NCBI GenBank assembly: GCA_019828565.1
Contig: JAHDYR010000069.1
Coordinates: 248,001-312,000 of the forward strand
From: Carpediemonas membranifera BICM
Taxonomy: Eukaryota; Protista; Fornicata
Direction: 5' to 3'
Length of the DNA: 64,000 bases
How positions within the stretch are numbered: the first letter of the stretch is position 1; every line of letters starts with the position of its first letter. Positions 37,577 through 48,233 of the stretch are shown here, one piece after another. The notes under the pieces are model-generated. The model ran no database searches. It was not told where the DNA came from and saw only the letters and a program-made list of their open reading frames with translations. The translations under genes and the position numbers were made by a program.

Positions 37577-37931
37577 CACCGATGGCGAATGATTCTGCAT
37601 CAGTGCCGATTCTGCTAAGCACTTGGCCCAAAGTCGACATCACAAATATTCCGAAAGAGAGACATGGGCACAGTACGATGGTATACGACACGGATATGAC
37701 CCTTTACAGGGCAGTGCCCCATATTCTCGAAGTTTTTATGAACTGGGAAGGCGGAAGAAATTCTGTCTGCTGCCACCTTAATCACCTCAAGTTTAAGGCG
37801 ACTATGAACAGTCTCTGATTGTAAACATCCGTGTTGCTTGTGTGGCTTCTCAAACTCGCTCATTCATCAGTTGATTTTTGATGTGTTCAGTTTCTCAGAC
37901 AAACCCAAGCTCTTCATCTTCGCTCTACGCC

Positions 37932-40900
37932 ATGGCAGAAAGCGGAGAAGGCGAACATTTTTCGGATAACCGTCTATTAGCTATCCGAAGATTCGTATGC
38001 AAGAGCCTCGTGGTTGCTGAGTCGGTTTTCGACGAAGCATACCACAAGGACCAAATAATGGTCGATAATTTCCTCAACAACATGCACCAAGCGATCCTCG
38101 TGTACAGAGATTCCCTCCCAGAGTCACCAGATGAGTGGATTGTCCAATTTGGCGTCCCAGGCCCGCGCGAGTCTTCTCTCAACGTCCCCGATGTATCCTC
38201 TGGCACCCAGCTCTGTTACTTCATGAACATCACCGACGACGTACTCCCCGACACCGACGCCTTTGACATGGACGACTGCCTCGTCTACGGCGTAGTGTCG
38301 GACTCTTTGATCTCCACGCTCAACAAGCTCGTCAACGATGTCTACCTCCCCCTTGTGGCCGCCACACGCGAGTCTAGCGGCCTTACCGTCTATGCTGAGG
38401 CCCAGGTTGCTCTCAACAAGCTCGCCTCCCAGCTCTCCCAAGTCACTCGCGACGTCGGCCGCGTCTCCCTCTCGCCGCCTATCAAGATCGCCGACCCAGC
38501 CGCAGTAGACAACGACACCCTCACAGCGATTACCGAGACCGTGAAGGAGTGGACCGGAGTTGTCCAGAACCAGCTCGACCTCCTATCAGCCCTCTCAATC
38601 CCCGCGGAAGACGGGCCCACTGCTGAGATCCTCCTATGGCGCGAGCGTGAGTCTGGCTACGGTGCCCTGTACGAGGCGCTGCACAAAAAGGATGCCATGG
38701 CCATGGTGAAGGTTCTCTCCGCAGAGGACGAGATCGTCTCGCACCAGTTTGCCACGCAGCTGTCAGAGCTCAACAAGCGGTATACCGAAGCCCGCGACAA
38801 CGTCCGATTCCTAGGCACCCTCGAGCGCCACTTCAAGCTGCTCGAGACCGAGACCCGCCTCGGCGCCATCTCGGAGTCTCTCACGAGTCTGTTCAGTGCA
38901 GTGAAGATGGTGTGGGTCATCTCCCGCTACTACAACACTGATGACCGCATGGTGCCTCTGCTCGAACGCACAGCTAACCAGATCGCCAGCCGCGTGTCGC
39001 AGGAGATCACGCTGACCTCAGTAGTCTCCCAACTTGAGGGTAACGCCGCTGGTGTCGCCGAGCAGGTCTCCGAAGCCCGTGATTTCCTGAAACAGTGGCA
39101 GCGCGCTTACGCTGAGACCCGCAAGAAGATCGAGGACGACGGCAGGTCCCAGCGCTGGGAGTTTGATCGCTCCCGCCTCTTTGGTCGCACCACATACATC
39201 GCCTCGCGGTGCCAAGACCTCCAGGAGATGTGCGTGCTCTTCCAACAGTTCACCTCGGTCATCGGCATGGACAACATCCCCCCTGCCGAGCTCGACGCCT
39301 TCTCCAGGGAGATCGACGCGCTCTTTGACCCGTTGTCCGAGTTCATCAACGCCCCGTCGGTTGCAGAGGCCGATGAGAAAGTCGTCAAGGACGTTTTCGA
39401 CCCCAACGAAAAGGCAGCTTGGGAAGCAGCCTTCGCAGCTTTCAAGAACCGCGCCGAGAAGGCCAAGGCGACCGTCGAGCATATCATTGACACCGCCTTC
39501 GAGCGCCTGACCTCTGTCGACTCGGCCATCGCCACGCTCACCAACATGCTCGAGGGCAACCGCATCGTAGACGAGCGAATCTCCCAGCAGATCGTGGAGA
39601 TCGTCTCCCAAGTCCAGCAGACTGTCGCCGCAGCCGACGCAAAGTTCGAGCAGTTTAAGGCAGGTCCACCCACCCTTGCGTCGGATGCCCCGGTGTCTGG
39701 CAAGATCATCTGGGCTCGCCTCCTCTTCCTCCCCGTCGCCCAGCTCTACCGCCGCCTCGAAGCACTCAACGAGGCCAGACGTAACCTCTTTGACGACGTC
39801 CCAACATACCAGCGGTTTAAGCTCGAGTACGACCGGCTGAAGACGAAGATCCGCGACTACCAGGGGGATCTGTTCAAGACGTGGAACAACAACGTCGGCC
39901 AAGTGACGGAGCTGAACCTCCAGCGGAACCTGCTCACGTTTGCCGACGATGAAGCCTCAGTCGACCCTTGGGAGCGGGGCATCGCAGTCAACTTCTCCGA
40001 CGACCTCCGTACGCTCATCACCGAGTGCCGCGCCCTCCTCCGTCTCGACTTCAGAGAGTCTCTCATCAGCGAGCTCGTCAAGGCCGTAGTTACTCGCTCC
40101 GAGTACTACTACTCGTTCAAGGACCAGCTGCAGGAGATGGTGACCTCGTACGAACGGCTCATGGCCCGACTCAAGCCCACGTTCAGAGAGCTTCTAGAGG
40201 AGAAGCTCAAGGAGCTCCATGCCGTGATCGAGCCCGGACTCAGGGACATCAACTGGAACTCACTCAACATAGGCACGTTTGTGGCCAAGTGCAACGCCGC
40301 CATCGTCGGGCTGACCAAGATTGTGAACCAGCTCGAGTCAAGCGATGCCAACCTCGAGGTCCTTGTCAGTGAGATCGCACGCGGTACACTGATCGCCAAG
40401 GTCGCTGGCTCTGGCGCCGTCGTCCACTCGGCAGACGTGCCCGAGATCGCTACGTTTGCTGAGGAGGCACACAAGCAGATCGAGAAGACCACGAAGCGAC
40501 TCGTCACAAAGTACGACGAGATGACTGGCATCCTCGTGAAGATCGAGGAGTCTGTCACGGGCACCACGGGGGGCCGTTCCCCTGCCATGGGCTCGTACTA
40601 CCTCCACTGGCAGGAGCGGGTCCGCGTGGCACTCGCGACACTTGTATCCAGAGCCATTAACACGTTTAACAACAACTTGAAGGCCCCTAGGCGGGAGACG
40701 GAGGACCTCAACGTGCCTGTAGCCCCGCCGCTGTTCCGCATCGACGCCATCCTCGTCGCTCCGTCGATCCTCCAGAAGCCGAGCACTGAGGACATCCGTA
40801 AGACTCTGACCAAGGTGCTCAAGGAGATCGTCAACACCTCAGCCGAGTTTATCCGCTGGTACGACGGCACGTGCATCAGGTGTGAGCTTCCCAAGGCCGG

Positions 40901-43900
40901 CCAGCCGTTTGTTCCCGTGGACGCCGCCCAGCCTAAGGAACGGGAAAGCCCCTCCCTCTCGCGCCAGTCCTCCCGCTCCCAGATCGGTGGGCAGACTAGC
41001 CGCGGCCGCATCACCCAGCGCAACAGTTCGCAGCGCCTCACGCTGACCAAGTCGGGCACCAAGTCGAAGATCTCCGTCAGCAACATGCGCATTGCCCCCG
41101 CCGTTGCTGCCCCCGTCCCTGCGATCAACTACACCTTCTTTATCGACGTCAGCTCGGACCCGAGTGTGAATGAGGCTCACCTCAAGACGAATCAGATCAT
41201 CGAGGACGCCATCAAGCTCATTGAGAGCCACCTCAAGTCCTGGGCCAGCTTCAGAGGGGTGTGGGACCCCTCCCGCCCCCAACTCATCGAGCACTGGGCC
41301 CATGAGCCCCGGAGCGTGACTGAGATTGACTCGAAGCTCAACTGGTACGCCCGAGTCGCCCCTACACTCAAGAGCTCGTTCCCCGGTAGCAAGCCAGTCG
41401 GATTCATCCAGGTGGACGTCTCTTCGCTCATTGACGGCATCCAGGAGGAGTCTAGGAAGTGGGTCGGCGCGCTCGGTGAGCTCATTGAAGATCAGCACAA
41501 GGCAAGGCTCGCGGCGTTTGAGGAGAAGATCGCTAACTTCGAGGAGGCGCTGGCCAAGGGCGAACGCATGTCTGGCGCGCAGCTGGAGCCTCTGAAGAAG
41601 CTCCTCGGGGCCATCAGCGAGGTCTACAACGAGGACAACAACGCCGAGCTCGAGATCCGGGACCTGACATATGCTTACGAGACTCTCCAGAACTACAAGG
41701 CGGGCAACCCGGACGAGATCCAGCGCGCTCTGGCCCTGCCCGCTCGTTGGAAGGCTCTGAAGGAAAAGTCAGCGACCGTGAACAAGTCTCTCGACGCTGT
41801 CCGCGAGAAGTTCCGCAAGGACACCAGCAAGCAGGCCAAGCGATTCGGTGACACCATCCATGCTTTTGCCGAGCGTTTCGCTGAGATGGACCCCAGCAAC
41901 ATCGTCGAGGGCACCGATGAGGAGATGGATCGCGCCGTCAAGGCCCTCGAGAAGCTCAGCACCGAGGTCCAGGAGCTCGAGGCCGAGAGAGACAACATCA
42001 CGCTCGCCCAACGCCTCTTTAACGATGCGCAGAGCCAGTATACAGACCTCAAGGTCATCGAAGTGAAGCTCGAGCGCACTACCCGCATCTTTGACGTCTA
42101 TAACTTCGTCAAGAAGAAGCTGCTCGACTGGTCGGACGTCGCATGGTCGAAGCTCGACATTGCGGTCCTCAACGACGGAGTGAAGGAGATGGAGAAGATG
42201 GTAGTGCAGCTCAAGGGTGGCCGTAAGAAGGGCGAGGCCCCCTCCGAGCTCGCCAAGTCCCCCGCCCTTGCCGCGGTCGAGACCAAGGTCCAGAACTTCA
42301 AGATGTCCATTCCCCTCCTCCAGAAGCTCACAGACGAGGCCCTTCGCGACCGTCACTGGACGAAACTCATGGAAGTGACGGGCAAGACGTTTGACAGGGA
42401 CAACATGACAGTCGGCTCGCTGCTTTCCATGGAGCTACACAAGCACGACGACAAAATCAACGAGATCCAAGCGTCCGCCCAGAAGGAGTTCAGCATCGAG
42501 AAGGGGCTGGCCGAGATCGAGGCCGTCTGGGCGAAGACGAAGTTCGAGCTCGCCAAGTACACCAAGGGCACCACTGATCGCGGGTTCATCCTCAAGTCGA
42601 TCGACGACATCCTCCTGACGCTAGAGGACAACACGATGAACCTGCAGACGATGAGTAGCTCTAAGCACGTGGCAGCGTTCGCCCAGGAGGTGCACCAGTG
42701 GGAAGGAAGGCTCACTCTCATCTCTGAGGTGTCCGAGCTCTGGATTGCCGTACAGAGGAAGTGGATGTACCTTGAGTCGATCTTTATTGGATCAGAGGAC
42801 ATTAGACTCCAGCTGCCGGAGGAGGCACGGAAGTTCGACAAGATTGACAATGATTTCCGTAAGGTGATGACCGAGACAGCGACCAACACGAACGTCCTCC
42901 AGGCATGTAGCGCTCCCAGCCGCCTCGAGAAACTCACCATGCTTGCTAACCAGATGGACAGCTGCCAGAAGAGCCTGTCGGAGTACCTCGAGACCAAGCG
43001 CTCGGCCTTTGCCCGGTTTTACTTCATCTCCGACGACGAGTTGCTCTCTGTTCTCGGTGACTCGGACCCACGTGCCGTGCAGCAGCACATGATCAAGCTG
43101 TTCGACAACACCAAGCTCCTCACCTTCGGCACGGGCAGCAAGGCCTCTACCGTCATCGGGGCACAGTCAAGCGAGGGTGAGACCTTTACCCTCAGAGAGC
43201 CCGTGCTCGCAGACGGACCAGTGGAGTCTTGGATGACGGCGGTCGAGCATGCGATGATCTCTTCAATCCACCAGACCACCAAGGAAGGGGTGTTCCACTA
43301 CGCCCAAAAGGACCGCATCCAGTGGATCTTCGAGTGTCTGGCCATGGTCACGCTCGTAGGCTCCCAGATCTGGTGGACTTGGCAGGTAGAGGACGTGTTC
43401 AGGGCTGTGGCCGAGGGGGACAAGCACGCCATGAAGGTCCTCAGCACGAAGCTTCACGCTCAGATCACGGATCTCGTCGCACAGGTGCGCAAAGACTTGT
43501 CTAGAGGCGACAGGTCGAAGATCAACACCCTCATCATCATAGACGTCCACGCACGCGATATAGTCGACCGCTTTGTCCGCGACTCCATCCTCCACGCCGC
43601 CGAGTTCGATTGGGAGTCCCAGATGAGATTCTATTGGGACCGTGCACGCGATACAGTCATCATGCGCCAATGCACCGGTTCCTTTGACTACGGGTTCCAG
43701 TACATGGGCCTCGCCTCCCGTCTGGTGATCACGCCTCTCACGGACAGGTGCATCATGACCCTGACTCAGGCCTTGACGATGTATCTGGGCGGATCTCCCG
43801 CCGGCCCCGCTGGTACAGGTAAGACAGAGACCGTCAAGGATCTCGCCAAGCACCTTGCGCTTTCTTGCGTTGTTTTCAGTATGTTTACCCTTGAGTTATT

Positions 43901-44272
43901 CGAACACTAACACAGATTGCGGTGACGGTCTGGATTATAAGGCTATGGGCGTCATCTTCTCGGGCCTCTGCGAGACGGGGGCCTGGGGTTGCGTTTGTAT
44001 ACTAATCATTTGATTACACAGTTTGATGAGTTCAACCGTATCGAGGCAGAGGTTCTTTCTGTCGTCTCTGCGCAGATCAAGAACATCCAGACTGCTCTCC
44101 AGCAGAACCTGACGCGATTTATCTTTGAGGGCCGGGAGATCAAGCTTGACTCCAAGTGGTACGTCCATCAACGACCAAACTAACACAGTGGCATCTTCAT
44201 CACCATGAACCCCGGCTACGCTGGCCGTACCGAGCTGCCCGACAACCTCAAGGCGCTCTTCCGACCTGTGAC
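37932..44272 (+). CDS. DNAH10: Axonemal dynein heavy chain, DNAH10/I1-alpha-like: N-terminal ~2,080 aa only (tail, linker, AAA1)
   Basis: [39 protein letters not shown] and [10 protein letters not shown]; P-loop [15 protein letters not shown]. Introns 43879-43915, 43993-44021 and 44159-44188 restore VFNC, GAWGC|FDEFNRI and KC|[28 protein letters not shown]. Dynein similarity ends at donor GTTTGT (44273). Confidence 0.9.
43879..43915 (+). other. Spliceosomal intron, 37 nt
   Basis: GTATGT...ACTAACACAG; removal restores dynein VFNC. Confidence 0.95.
43993..44021 (+). other. Spliceosomal intron, 29 nt
   Basis: GTTTGT...ATTACACAG; removal restores WGCFDEFNR. Confidence 0.95.
44159..44188 (+). 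other. Spliceosomal intron, 30 nt
   Basis: GTACGT...ACTAACACAG; removal restores [11 protein letters not shown]. Confidence 0.95.
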
Positions 44273-44486
44273 GTTTGTTCCCTTTTCCAGCTCCTGTCTG
44301 GCGTCTTATGCAGTGATGGTAAGGTATCTCACACAGTGAAACAACAACTATGTAACAACATCAATGGGTGGCTGCTGGGGCGGGGTGGTAGGCTGGGTAT
44401 GCTGTTGGGGCTTATTCCATGCAATAGTAGTGGTTTTTATTAATCCGTGACTCGACTCCACGACACCCTTGTGTCGAATTTCGATC

Positions 44487-44644
44487 ATACTTACCATTGG
44501 AGGCCATATGTCCCTCAAGAACGACGTTGGCGATCTTGGAGTGCTACACGTTTGTGGTTGGTGCACCTAGGTCCTCGCTGGCTGGTCTAAGGCCTGGCGA
44601 GATCCTCTTATTTGTTCCAGCGGAGAAGGCGTTCGCGCCGCTCC
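44487..44644 (+). ncRNA. U1: U1 snRNA
   Basis: 5' end ATACTTACC. Helix H is GAGG(44500-03)/CCTC(44604-07). SL1 (44504-44530) has the 10-nt loop CCTCAAGAAC. SL2 spans ~44532-44573 and SL3 44574-44601. An Sm-like TATTTGT precedes SL4, GGAG-AA-GGCG-TTCG-CGCC-G-CTCC. Length ~158 nt. Confidence 0.9.
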
Positions 44645-45116
44645 TACCCCCCAACTAACAACATCAAATGTCCCTTAAACGCGCTTTAATACTTGTGAAC
44701 AGTCGTCAGACGTAGTCGCTTGCTGTAATGCGGCATTGTTTCCGCTCATTATGAGGGTATTAGCGTGATTGCATAAGTCCAGAGACATACAAGGGCACTC
44801 TTGCTTGGCTGCGGTAAAGTTCCTCATTGGCGCCGCACCTCATCTCAGCAATGCTGTGTGAATCTTCAGTCTTTCAGGCATCACGGAGCTCTGCCCAGCG
44901 ACTCACACCCCGGAGTGACGAAACCTGGTAAAGACGTGTACCTCCTATGCCAACGCTACATCCCTGCATCCGCCATAAACACAATAATCAGCTCGAGGGC
45001 AACACCGCAGAGTCAAGTGAGTCAACTTGCGCCGCAAAGACTCAAGCCCGCAAAGAAACAAAGGGTCCTGAGGACGAAAAGTGATCCTCTAGACTTTGAC
45101 CGTCGTTGACCTGGAT

Positions 45117-45305
45117 GCGGCGGCCAAAATATTTGGCGGCCCAATCACAGGATCGCGTGCGGATCGGGTGGAGTCAAGCGGAGTCGTCAGCATAGCCCCG
45201 GCTGTGGTTGTTCTTTTTTAGGGCTACCGGGCACTCCTCCCCTAGTGCCCGGCCCCGACACGAGGCTGTCCCGGCACCCGAGATAAACGCTGACCCGCGC
45301 TGATT
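45117..45305. repeat. 188/189-bp dispersed repeat, copy 2 (inverted relative to copy 1)
   Basis: Near-identical reverse complement of 18858-19045; ends 72 bp upstream of the receptor ATG. Confidence 0.95.
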
Positions 45306-45377
45306 CGACTCAGATCATGGCCGCAGGATAGCCTTCAAGGTTTGGTTTCCTCACCTGTAAGGTGCTATTGGACGCTG

Positions 45378-48233
45378 ATGCTCCGCCAATGGCTACTGGT
45401 CTTCCTTCTATATGTATTCCTCGCGGAAGGCAAGACCAACGTTTCTATTGCTGCGCCTGTTTCATCCGCAACCTCGAACTTCCAAACGCTTGCAGCGCAG
45501 TTCAACGCTGCTCAGAGCGACATCGAGGTCACTGTGACCCTTATTCCGACGACTGTAGACTACTATCACACCATCAAAGGAGCGCTGGTCCTCGGGGACA
45601 TCACATTCGACGGCATTGCCTTCGGACAAGTTCATCTGCTCGAGATGCTCCTAGCTGGCGTGGACTCCGCCTCGAACTCGGATGAATGGAACCTAGAACC
45701 GCTCACGGCCCGTGTAGCAGCGTCTCCCTTGCTCGACTGGGACGGCATCAACCTCTTCACACGTTCATACGGCACAAACTTCAACAAGGACGTCTACTTG
45801 GTGCCATTTGACGGCGACTACCACCAGCTCTACCTCAGGGAAGACGTGCTGGACTACTACGGCCTGGCTGTGCCACGCTCCATTCCCGAGCTCGTCGAGG
45901 TTGCTCGGGCACTTAGTGCAAGCGATATGGCGGACAACAGCAGTATGCCAGATGTCGCCTTTTGTGTGGGCGATGGCACAAACCTGCAGCGATTCGTCAC
46001 GGACTTTACGATGCCTTTCATCCAATATGCTGGCACGGCCCAAGGAGGGTACTTCACCACTGACGGCATGGTCAATCTGTTCAACAACGCAGGGTTCAAG
46101 GCGGGTGTGGAGGCCTTTAGAGCCATGCTGGACAATGGCTACGAGGACATAGAGATCGCCTCGTCCAGAGAGGCGTTCCTCAACGGAACCTGTGCCATCA
46201 CGATCGACTGGGGCGATCTACTCTTCTCAGCGCCACGCTCGGCGGTCGAGGGGGTAGCAAACCACACTGTGGCCATGGTCATGCCGGGGTCAACTCGAAT
46301 TTATGATCGCGACTCTGGGAGGTCAGACTTGGTCGACTGCACGGCCACACTATGCCCGTTCGCCTCGGCAAACAGCAGAGGTGACCTGGTCAACACAGCA
46401 CCACTTGCAAGCCATGGCGGATGGTCGATCGGTGTTCCCAAGATCGCCTCCCACAAGAATGAAGTCTTCGCATTTCTCGAGTGGGCTGCCTCCCCCGACG
46501 TAATCAACCCAATAACGCTCCAAGGGTCGGGATTTGAACCATTCAGAACTTCTGTGGCCGCCAACACCACTCTATGGGACGTGGCGGGATTGTCGGTCGC
46601 GAGAGATTGGATCATGGATGTGTTGGACACGATATTGACCGCTGGGAACGTCGCGCTTGACATGAGGTTGCCGGGATACAGTGATTATGTCGCTGTAATG
46701 GAACAGAATCTACGATCGTATCTATATGATGGCGAATCCATCGACGTTGCGCTGTCGAATCTGGATCGTGAGGTTGAGGCCGTGACCGATAGATATGGAC
46801 GAGACATGCAACTGCTGTATTATCGCATGAATCTCAACGTGAACCCGCTAACCACCCTCACCCTCGACCGGATTTACGGATTATTCAGCATGGCATGTAT
46901 AATTGCCACTGCCGCGGTAATCATCATCACCACCATTTGTGTGGTTTTCTTTGGATTCATCATGAACGACGGCAACTTTAAGCTCGCCTCGCCCAACTAT
47001 CTGATTCTCGGCAATGTCGGCTGGCTCACCGCCACCGCGGGTGTGGCGTTGTTTGTATGCTCTTTCGTCTGGAGCTCTACTCTGCTGTGCATCAACACGC
47101 TTGTCTTCATCGGCCTGGGCGTCGCTATCGCCCTCGGCTCCCTCTTCGCCAAGCAGGCCCGCATTTACTGGATACTCAGGGCGACCCGGAGCCATAAGAA
47201 GCGGTTCACGGTCCCCAACGACCTTCACCTACTGCCGCTGCTCCTGGCTGGCGTCCCGCTTCCCTGCGGTCTTGTCATCGTGTGGTCGATACTTGATGCT
47301 TTCAAGGAGTCATCAGTCAAGCTCGGCGACTACACCGCGTGTGTAGCATGTCAGTCGACCCACGCCATGCTCTGGGCGATCGCTGTCGGTCTACTCGCAG
47401 TGTTCTATCTTGTCCCCAACGGCCTGCTCGTGTTCAAAACAAGGAACCTTCCGATATCAGAGACACGACTGTTAAGTATCTCTATCCAGATCTCGGCAGT
47501 GATGTGTACCGTCATCGCACTCGTCTACCTCATCGCCGTTGACCCCTTCGTCATGCCTAAGATTGCACCGCCAGTGTTCACAGTCGGTGTGACGCTGATC
47601 CAGGCTGTTACTTTCGTACCGAAGCTCTGGAAAGCTGTGCGTCGACAGCCGCTGTCTAAGAGGGACTTCAGGTTGCTTACAGGCAAGGGTGATCTCTCAC
47701 TGGATGGGTACATCAGATGCCCTCGATGCCACAGCTGTTTCGCTGCATTCGGGAACCAGATCTCGAAGGATGAGGCGGTCGACGGCGGGTTCAATGAATC
47801 TGTGTCTGGTGCCAGATCACATAGGACACGATCTATCAGATCTGCCCTGTCTAGCGCTGTGTCGTCAGCCATCGTCCCCGCCAAAGCATCGCGGGCTGAC
47901 CCTGAAGGAATGCAGCGGTTCCTAGCATCTCCGTACGCCGATATCGAGCTGACCATGCCCGCTCGGCGCCTGAACCCAGACGCAGCTCCGCAAGATCCCA
48001 CCCCGCCCAGTTCACTGCTCGACAATCGGCTGTTACGGAGAGTTTCGGATGCTAGCTCCGTGAACGGGCCGGTTGACAGTGCGACGGAGACGCTGAGCTT
48101 CTCTGAAGAGGACTCGGGCGAGGCGTTCAGGCGCCCACCGCCCGTCTTTGAGGAGGTGGAGGCGGAGGTGCTCTCGTCCGAGCCTGTCGTGTCGAGTGGC
48201 GTCTATTCGTACGACTCGACTGATCCGATGTAA
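45378..48233 (+). CDS. Sugar-type solute-binding protein fused to a class C (7tm_3)-like seven-TM receptor
   Basis: Signal peptide; SBP family-1 motifs (VYLVPFDGDYHQLYLREDVL, AFLNGTCAITIDW, GGWSIGV); 7TM motifs FKLASPNYL, LFAKQARIYWIL and KTRNLPISETR. Confidence 0.8.
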   Translation: MLRQWLLVFLLYVFLAEGKTNVSIAAPVSSATSNFQTLAAQFNAAQSDIEVTVTLIPTTVDYYHTIKGALVLGDITFDGIAFGQVHLLEMLLAGVDSASNSDEWNLEPLTARVAASPLLDWDGINLFTRSYGTNFNKDVYLVPFDGDYHQLYLREDVLDYYGLAVPRSIPELVEVARALSASDMADNSSMPDVAFCVGDGTNLQRFVTDFTMPFIQYAGTAQGGYFTTDGMVNLFNNAGFKAGVEAFRAMLDNGYEDIEIASSREAFLNGTCAITIDWGDLLFSAPRSAVEGVANHTVAMVMPGSTRIYDRDSGRSDLVDCTATLCPFASANSRGDLVNTAPLASHGGWSIGVPKIASHKNEVFAFLEWAASPDVINPITLQGSGFEPFRTSVAANTTLWDVAGLSVARDWIMDVLDTILTAGNVALDMRLPGYSDYVAVMEQNLRSYLYDGESIDVALSNLDREVEAVTDRYGRDMQLLYYRMNLNVNPLTTLTLDRIYGLFSMACIIATAAVIIITTICVVFFGFIMNDGNFKLASPNYLILGNVGWLTATAGVALFVCSFVWSSTLLCINTLVFIGLGVAIALGSLFAKQARIYWILRATRSHKKRFTVPNDLHLLPLLLAGVPLPCGLVIVWSILDAFKESSVKLGDYTACVACQSTHAMLWAIAVGLLAVFYLVPNGLLVFKTRNLPISETRLLSISIQISAVMCTVIALVYLIAVDPFVMPKIAPPVFTVGVTLIQAVTFVPKLWKAVRRQPLSKRDFRLLTGKGDLSLDGYIRCPRCHSCFAAFGNQISKDEAVDGGFNESVSGARSHRTRSIRSALSSAVSSAIVPAKASRADPEGMQRFLASPYADIELTMPARRLNPDAAPQDPTPPSSLLDNRLLRRVSDASSVNGPVDSATETLSFSEEDSGEAFRRPPPVFEEVEAEVLSSEPVVSSGVYSYDSTDPM

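What the first reader, a model, noticed from the sequence alone, without database searches (positions are those of the whole stretch)
44353..44667. Same 12-nt motif after the dangling dynein donor and after U1 snRNA: putative shared 3'-processing signal
Seen: TAACAACATCAA occurs exactly at 44353-44364 (80 nt after the dynein donor) and at 44656-44667 (11 nt after U1 stem-loop 4, where an snRNA 3' box would sit). Both copies have CAAC just upstream. Established: in Giardia one 12-nt motif directs 3'-end cleavage of both ncRNAs and the 5' halves of trans-spliced introns. Inference: this is an analogous element with a different sequence, releasing a non-polyadenylated 5' pre-mRNA half. Caveat: the motif is A/C-rich and low in complexity.
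Basis: partly seen in the sequence, partly recalled or inferred. Interest (0 to 1): 0.8.

Follow-up and report, generated by a model that had tools for sequence, protein, structure and literature searches.

The report
Shared RNA end signal in Carpediemonas
In a free-living relative of Giardia, one short sequence follows small nuclear and nucleolar RNA genes, histone genes and the first half of a dynein gene that is split between two contigs, so the cell probably uses one non-poly(A) end signal both to finish these RNAs and to free an RNA half for trans-splicing, as Giardia does with a different signal and different genes.

Summary
Confirmed and extended. The genome is Carpediemonas membranifera. 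Both 12-mers sit where stated. The working signal is a looser consensus, about TAA(N)YAAHATCV. It follows U1 (3 copies), U2 (6/6), U4 (2/2), U3, a SNORD31-like snoRNA and the hairpin of H3, H2A/H2B and H4 genes, but not U6. The dangling donor is real: the missing 3' half of this DNAH10/I1-alpha dynein lies on contig C8, in frame, behind an acceptor whose intron stub pairs with the window's stub. A second genome (probably C. frisia) has the same split, a wholly different but again complementary stub pair, and the motif again right behind the pairing arm, and behind H3. Aduncisulcus is unsplit. It works like Giardia's processing motif but is not that motif. This scan noted the split dynein, the histone link and the U1 signal before, on other DNA of this genome.

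The parts
37878..44272 (+). 5' half of a DNAH10 / inner-arm I1-alpha dynein heavy chain (tail, linker, AAA1 up to Pfam AAA_6 position 162), with three short cis introns at 43879-43915, 43993-44021, 44159-44188; true start codon not determined
44273..44278 (+). Phase-2 splice donor GTTTGT with no cis acceptor that restores the frame; partner acceptor lies on contig C8 (first exon base C8:541498, minus strand)
44276..44348 (+). 5' intron half: successive helices complementary to C8:541521-541604, ending in a perfect 15-bp arm (44334-44348)
44353..44364 (+). 3'-end signal, copy behind the intron half, 4 nt after the pairing arm
   Evidence: counterpart at L092:11439 in the second genome
44487..44646 (+). 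U1 snRNA gene (5' ATACTTACC, Sm site about 44609-44616, stem-loop 4 ending 44644)
   Evidence: two further copies on C17 also followed by the motif
44656..44667 (+). 3'-end signal, copy behind U1, in 3'-box position

Best explanation
The motif is the Carpediemonas signal for making 3' ends of RNA polymerase II transcripts that are not polyadenylated. It is read on the nascent RNA or at its exit, in the sense direction, and the end is set a few nucleotides upstream of it. Behind snRNAs, snoRNAs and histone hairpins it does the job of a 3' box. Behind the dynein donor it ends the 5' transcript just after the pairing arm; that RNA anneals by about 50 base pairs to the intron stub of a separately transcribed 3' half from contig C8, bringing donor, branch point and acceptor together so that the spliceosome joins them into one DNAH10 mRNA. 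Shown: positions, strand, spacing, complementarity, reading frame, conservation in a second genome. Inferred: cleavage or termination at the motif, absence of poly(A), the splicing itself. Guess: the nuclease is an Integrator-like or CPSF73-like beta-CASP enzyme (about even odds that it is the IntS11 type).
For: Motif directly after 6/6 U2 and 2/2 U4 genes found without using the motif, 3 U1 copies, U3 and a SNORD31-like RNA, two copies each, 6-7 nt after a GGTGTC-N4-GACACC hairpin behind four H3, five H2A/H2B-type and at least three H4-type genes. Chance of a degenerate copy in a given 25-nt stretch is 6.6e-4. Absent after U6, which ends in a T run, after the tRNA, and after the ordinary genes of the 64-kb window. 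Always sense and downstream, never upstream of these RNAs. Dynein: exactly one orphan N-half (C68) and one orphan C-half (C8) among the dynein loci; they abut on an unsplit orthologue, residues 2018/2019 of P0188; duplex -79 kcal/mol against -42 +/- 7 for 3,000 random stretches. Second genome GCA_002919055.1: same phase-2 break, unrelated stub sequences that pair within species (net -37.7 against -7.7 +/- 3.2) but poorly across species (-21.7, -14.3), motif variant 3 nt after a perfect 14-bp arm, the only copy in 16 kb, and again 6 nt after the H3 hairpin.
Against: 1,274 degenerate copies genome-wide, most of those inspected in repeats, some inside coding sequence or antisense, so the motif is not sufficient by itself. 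U3, SNORD31-like and H3 were found by searching with the motif (their discovery is circular; U1, U2, U4 and the second-genome sites are not). The motif can partly pair with the C8 stub (44354-44358). The C8 half starts with an in-frame ATG one base after the acceptor and is annotated as a separate protein (KAG9396016.1). Nuclease identity untested.
Confidence: 0.8

Rival explanations
1. The motif is a real 3' box for small RNAs and histones, but the dynein halves are not spliced: each is translated alone (the 5' half reads 21 codons into the stub to a stop at 44336-44338, the 3' half starts at its ATG) and the two polypeptides assemble.
For: ATG right behind the acceptor in both genomes and separate NCBI protein; read-through stop; a separately expressed dynein piece is reported for Giardia (Roy et al. 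2012 title cited in PMC10711314; detail from memory).
Against: Canonical donor and acceptor in matching phase, and long complementarity rebuilt from different sequence in two genomes; the read-through tail is not conserved (second genome stops at once); the break falls inside AAA1; a motif-ended, non-polyadenylated RNA would be a poor mRNA.
Confidence: 0.07
2. The motif is a DNA-level Pol II terminator or binding site (road-block) rather than an RNA cleavage signal; RNA ends are then trimmed back by exonucleases to the hairpin, Sm site or duplex.
For: Many copies in LTR-like repeats, often several in the same orientation; no secondary structure in the motif; spacing to the last structure varies from about 4 to 13 nt.
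Against: Tight 6-7 nt spacing behind histone hairpins in both genomes and 3-4 nt behind both pairing arms looks like a ruler on RNA; Giardia precedent is cleavage of longer precursors (PMC3510501). This rival changes the mechanism, not the outcome.
Confidence: 0.1
3. The copy behind the dynein donor is coincidence (A/C-rich arm sequence) or an upstream element of the neighbouring U1 gene; the split could be an assembly artefact.
For: Low complexity; the arm itself is an AAC repeat; the copy lies 135 nt before the U1 start.
Against: The second genome has the motif at the same place with no AAC repeat and no U1 nearby; no other snRNA or snoRNA locus has an upstream copy; both halves are flanked by unrelated genes in two independent assemblies.
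Confidence: 0.03

Closest known systems
Giardia lamblia 12-nt ncRNA / trans-intron processing motif (Hudson et al. 2012, PMC3510501)
   Same: One short motif behind snRNAs, snoRNAs and the 5' halves of trans-spliced introns, placed directly after or overlapping the pairing arm; 80 nt from the donor here, 34-93 nt (17 in p68) in Giardia (PMC5224939), 119 nt in the second genome.
   Different: Different sequence (only the final T-x-A-A agrees with Giardia's TCCTTTACTCAA type); absent after U6, which Giardia's motif found; also behind histone hairpins, whereas Giardia histone mRNAs are polyadenylated and lack a hairpin (PMC1872034). Not conserved in Spironucleus (PMC6679479), so homology cannot be assumed.
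Giardia trans-spliced (split) spliceosomal introns: Hsp90, dynein beta (2), dynein gamma, p68 (PMC10711314, PMC5224939)
   Same: Distant gene halves, canonical splice sites, long intermolecular pairing, end signal on the 5' half.
   Different: Gene is DNAH10/I1-alpha, not one of Giardia's; Hsp90 and the other dyneins are contiguous here; the Aduncisulcus orthologue is contiguous and intronless at this site. Independent origin is the simplest reading.
snRNA 3' box read by Integrator in animals and plants (own knowledge)
   Same: Short element a few to about 15 nt behind the mature snRNA end of Pol II snRNAs, absent from U6.
   Different: Sequence unrelated to the animal box; also used by snoRNA, histone and pre-mRNA halves; factor not identified.
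Histone mRNA stem-loop plus U7-bound downstream element (own knowledge)
   Same: A-rich lead-in, 6-bp stem with 4-nt loop, second element just downstream.
   Different: Stem sequence drifted; downstream element is the snRNA-type motif 6-7 nt away, not a purine-rich U7 site; U7 and SLBP not tested.

Membership tests
Giardia processing motif | Consensus [TAC]C[CA]TT[TC][ATC][CTA]T[CTA]AA | tested here: not met
   Invariant C2, T4, T5 are A, C/T, A here (against PMC3510501)
Giardia processing motif | At the 3' ends of snRNA and snoRNA genes | tested here: met
   U1, U2, U4, U3, SNORD31-like; not U6
Giardia processing motif | Directly after the pairing arm of trans-intron 5' halves | tested here: met
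   4 nt and 3 nt after the arm in the two genomes
Giardia processing motif | RNA 3' ends map at or just upstream of the motif | not testable with these tools
Giardia-type trans-spliced intron | Orphan donor and orphan acceptor at distant loci, in frame | tested here: met
Giardia-type trans-spliced intron | Extended pairing between the intron halves | tested here: met
Giardia-type trans-spliced intron | Spliced junction seen in RNA | not tested
snRNA 3' box / Integrator | Element shortly downstream of Pol II snRNAs, absent from U6 | tested here: met
snRNA 3' box / Integrator | IntS11/IntS9 nuclease present and required | tested here: inconclusive
   Two Beta-Casp genes, open frames 672 and 600 aa; the CPSF73 C-terminal model found nothing; sequences could not be fetched
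Histone stem-loop / U7 system | 6-bp stem, 4-nt loop after the stop codon | tested here: met
   loop shorter in the second genome's H3
Histone stem-loop / U7 system | Purine-rich downstream element paired by U7 snRNA | not tested
   The element present is the shared motif; no U7 or SLBP search was run

The most novel reading that the evidence does not exclude
Carpediemonas uses a single signal for all of its non-polyadenylated Pol II ends (snRNA, snoRNA, histone mRNA, trans-intron 5' half, perhaps LTR transcripts), and capture of such a small-RNA end signal is the enabling step by which an intron can break in two; it happened at least twice in fornicates, with different signals and different genes.
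Probability: 0.5. Interest if true: 0.85.

Novelty: new variant of a known kind. Interest (0 to 1): 0.73.

Why it matters
In the papers searched, motif-assisted trans-splicing of split introns is described in this group only for Giardia (searches found nothing for Carpediemonas). A second lineage that reaches the same design with another signal and another gene turns a parasite oddity into a repeatable route for gene fission: pairing stub plus borrowed small-RNA end signal. It also puts histone mRNA ends and snRNA ends on one signal, which bears on how the U7 and Integrator pathways relate, and gives a practical handle for finding unannotated small RNAs in a culturable free-living metamonad. 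The public annotation treats the dynein halves as separate genes.

Tried and rejected
Donor-plus-motif patterns (45-75 and 76-106 nt) gave no second convincing split gene: L047 has no coding sequence upstream, most others are repeats or U1; a few (C6:397039, C6:1698253, C9:172445, C16:124050, C16:739693) could not be inspected, and shorter or longer spacings were not searched. U5 was not found by Rfam or loop-I patterns (the pattern covered only the 13-nt form). The metagenome scan returned only the known second genome. The exact-12-mer count (292 against 0 reversed) was rejected as proof of function because repeats and codon strings inflate it. The large protein search was not needed.

Full report
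Observation. The 12-mer TAACAACATCAA lies at 44353-44364 and 44656-44667 and nowhere else in the window at up to one mismatch; shuffles give 0.07. The first copy is 80 nt after the GT at 44273; the second is 11 nt after stem-loop 4 of a real, divergent U1 gene (44487-44646, Rfam E 6e-8).

Organism. The window is C68:248001-312000 of a 24.24-Mb, 69-contig genome. The best protein hit of the partner gene is named Carpediemonas membranifera, and size, contig number and GC match the table in PMC8516963.

The dangling donor has a partner. The dynein in the window holds DHC_N1, DHC_N2 and AAA_6 up to model position 162 and then stops. A genome search with AAA_6 finds one locus that begins at position 163 with nothing upstream, on C8, minus strand. 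Domain coordinates show one orphan N-half (C68) and one orphan C-half (C8); the other well-scoring dynein loci have DHC_N2 next to AAA_6, and Dynein_C or a single long open frame behind it. The C8 exon is preceded by a pyrimidine stretch, a TTTAC branch-like word and TAG, and donor and acceptor are in the same phase. Compared separately with an unsplit orthologue (P0188), the 5' half ends at LFRPV plus two bases and the 3' half starts at the next residues, MVVPD, position 2019. Homologues are DNAH10 / I1-alpha; 160 of the 188 long proteins retrieved carry the junction word intact. The 92-nt stub behind the donor pairs with the stub before the acceptor in successive helices ending in a perfect 15-bp arm (44334-44348 with C8:541590-541604); duplex energy -79 kcal/mol against -42 +/- 7 (minimum -70) for 3,000 random stretches.

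Second genome. The closest homologues of both halves come from assembly GCA_002919055.1, on two different contigs (P0121 in L092, P0002 in L091). It breaks at the same base, with donor GTAAGT. Its stubs look unrelated to those of C. membranifera, yet pair with each other (net -37.7 against -7.7 +/- 3.2 kcal/mol; perfect 14-bp arm) and only weakly across species. The variant TAATAACATCAC starts 3 nt after that arm and is the only copy in the 16-kb locus; no U1 lies nearby. This removes assembly error, chance and a U1-promoter role as explanations. The Aduncisulcus paluster orthologue is contiguous and intronless at the site.

Where else the motif stands. U2 and U4 were found by Rfam without using the motif: all six U2 and both U4 genes are followed at once by a variant; U4 is confirmed by its pairing with U6 (-40 kcal/mol). 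U6 ends in a T run and has none. Two more U1 copies on C17 have it. A box-D-plus-motif pattern yielded U3 (E 1e-10) and a SNORD31-like RNA (E 6e-4), two copies each, and, unexpectedly, histone H3 genes. Histone loci from Pfam carry a GGTGTC-N4-GACACC hairpin with the motif 6-7 nt behind it: four H3, five H2A/H2B-type, and a TAACCAAAATCAG variant at H4-type loci; several variant histone loci show neither. The second genome's H3 has a hairpin and, 6 nt later, TAATAACATCCT. Aligned, the sites share TAA, an optional base, then YAAHATC and little else.

Background. The degenerate motif has 1,274 copies (reversed control 33), one per 38 kb of strand, so a given 25-nt stretch has a 6.6e-4 chance of holding one. 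The association with the small-RNA and histone genes is therefore far beyond chance. But most copies inspected are in repeats: next to integrase or chromodomain frames of LTR retrotransposons, several in sense downstream of the frame, others antisense or inside coding sequence. The motif is thus not sufficient alone, as Hudson et al. also saw in Giardia. Whether the LTR copies are functional ends is open.

Mechanism. Strict sense orientation, downstream position, short fixed spacing from the last structured or paired base, presence on Pol II and absence on Pol III genes make a 3'-end signal for non-polyadenylated Pol II RNA the best reading (inference). For the dynein, an end 0-4 nt after the arm gives a 5' RNA that terminates in its pairing arm, protected by the duplex and free of the downstream U1 gene; the duplex leaves about 3 nt after the donor and about 22 nt before the acceptor unpaired, close to the 29-37 nt of the local cis introns. 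The genome has two beta-CASP genes with open frames of 672 and 600 aa, sizes that recall CPSF73 and IntS11 (from memory); I could not assign them. RNA support is indirect only: run X1 holds 0.70 of the words of 41500-45300, which matches the exonic share, 0.68-0.71, as an RNA run would.

Comparison. It works like the Giardia processing motif (PMC3510501, PMC5224939) but is not a member by sequence: three of Giardia's six invariant positions differ, U6 lacks it, histones have it (Giardia's are polyadenylated, PMC1872034), and Spironucleus does not keep Giardia's motif (PMC6679479). The split gene differs from Giardia's Hsp90, p68 and dynein beta and gamma (PMC10711314); Hsp90 is whole here. Paper searches found no report of trans-splicing in Carpediemonas, within a library that lacks most subscription journals.

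Earlier scan notes, opened after I had reached this reading, describe the split dynein from the C8 side, the histone link and the U1 signal; my own tests agree with them, and they are not counted as support.

Verdict. Real feature; new variant of a known kind; interest 0.73; confidence 0.8 in the combined model, higher for the association itself, lower for the nuclease.

Noticed in passing
L031-L036 (all six U2 copies): The branch-point pairing word reads GTGAAGTT instead of the usual GTGTAGTA; many introns here and in the second genome end in TTAC-N2-AG as well as CTAAC-N2-AG, which may be the matching change.
   Followed up: no
L091, P0002 residues about 2012-2497: The second genome's DNAH10 3' half carries a 486-aa intein (starts with Cys, ends His-Asn, followed by Cys) in the AAA6 region, absent from C. 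membranifera. Inteins in DNAH10 are known from Anaeramoeba (PMC10710043); one gene would then need both RNA trans-splicing and protein splicing.
   Followed up: partly
G000:C64:4379-4454 +: Single-copy RNA candidate with an Sm site, a small hairpin and the exact motif; context resembles the 3' end of U5 but no canonical loop I was found.
   Followed up: partly
L070/L071 (C6:235270-236273), L073 (C6:773579), L061 (C1:1278450, C54:40018), L047 (C6:413132), C10:298511, C10:340373 and three copies: Intergenic motif copies behind unannotated structured stretches, likely further small RNAs; L070 has two motifs about 100 nt apart, like a two-RNA precursor; L073 follows a ribosomal-protein-like gene. 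No Rfam match.
   Followed up: partly
L002, L006, L007, L016 and related loci: Exact motif in non-coding repeats 130-680 nt downstream of LTR-retrotransposon integrase or chromodomain frames, in sense; many repeat loci hold two or three co-oriented copies 58-127 nt apart. Possibly the elements' own 3'-end signal.
   Followed up: partly
window 44365-44415: G-rich tract directly after the dynein motif copy, before the U1 upstream region; the second genome also has a short G-rich run there.
   Followed up: no
window 45342-48233 +: Class C GPCR-like 7TM domain fused to a bacterial-type solute-binding domain.
   Followed up: no
G000:C68:402784, C13:826700, C6:547443: Very divergent dynein-like long frames with only weak DHC_N2 or AAA_6 matches.
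   Followed up: no
G000:C8:541339-541363: The C8 dynein half has a short cis intron 44 codons after the trans acceptor, absent from the second genome; the window's third cis intron (44159-44188) is likewise absent there.
   Followed up: partly
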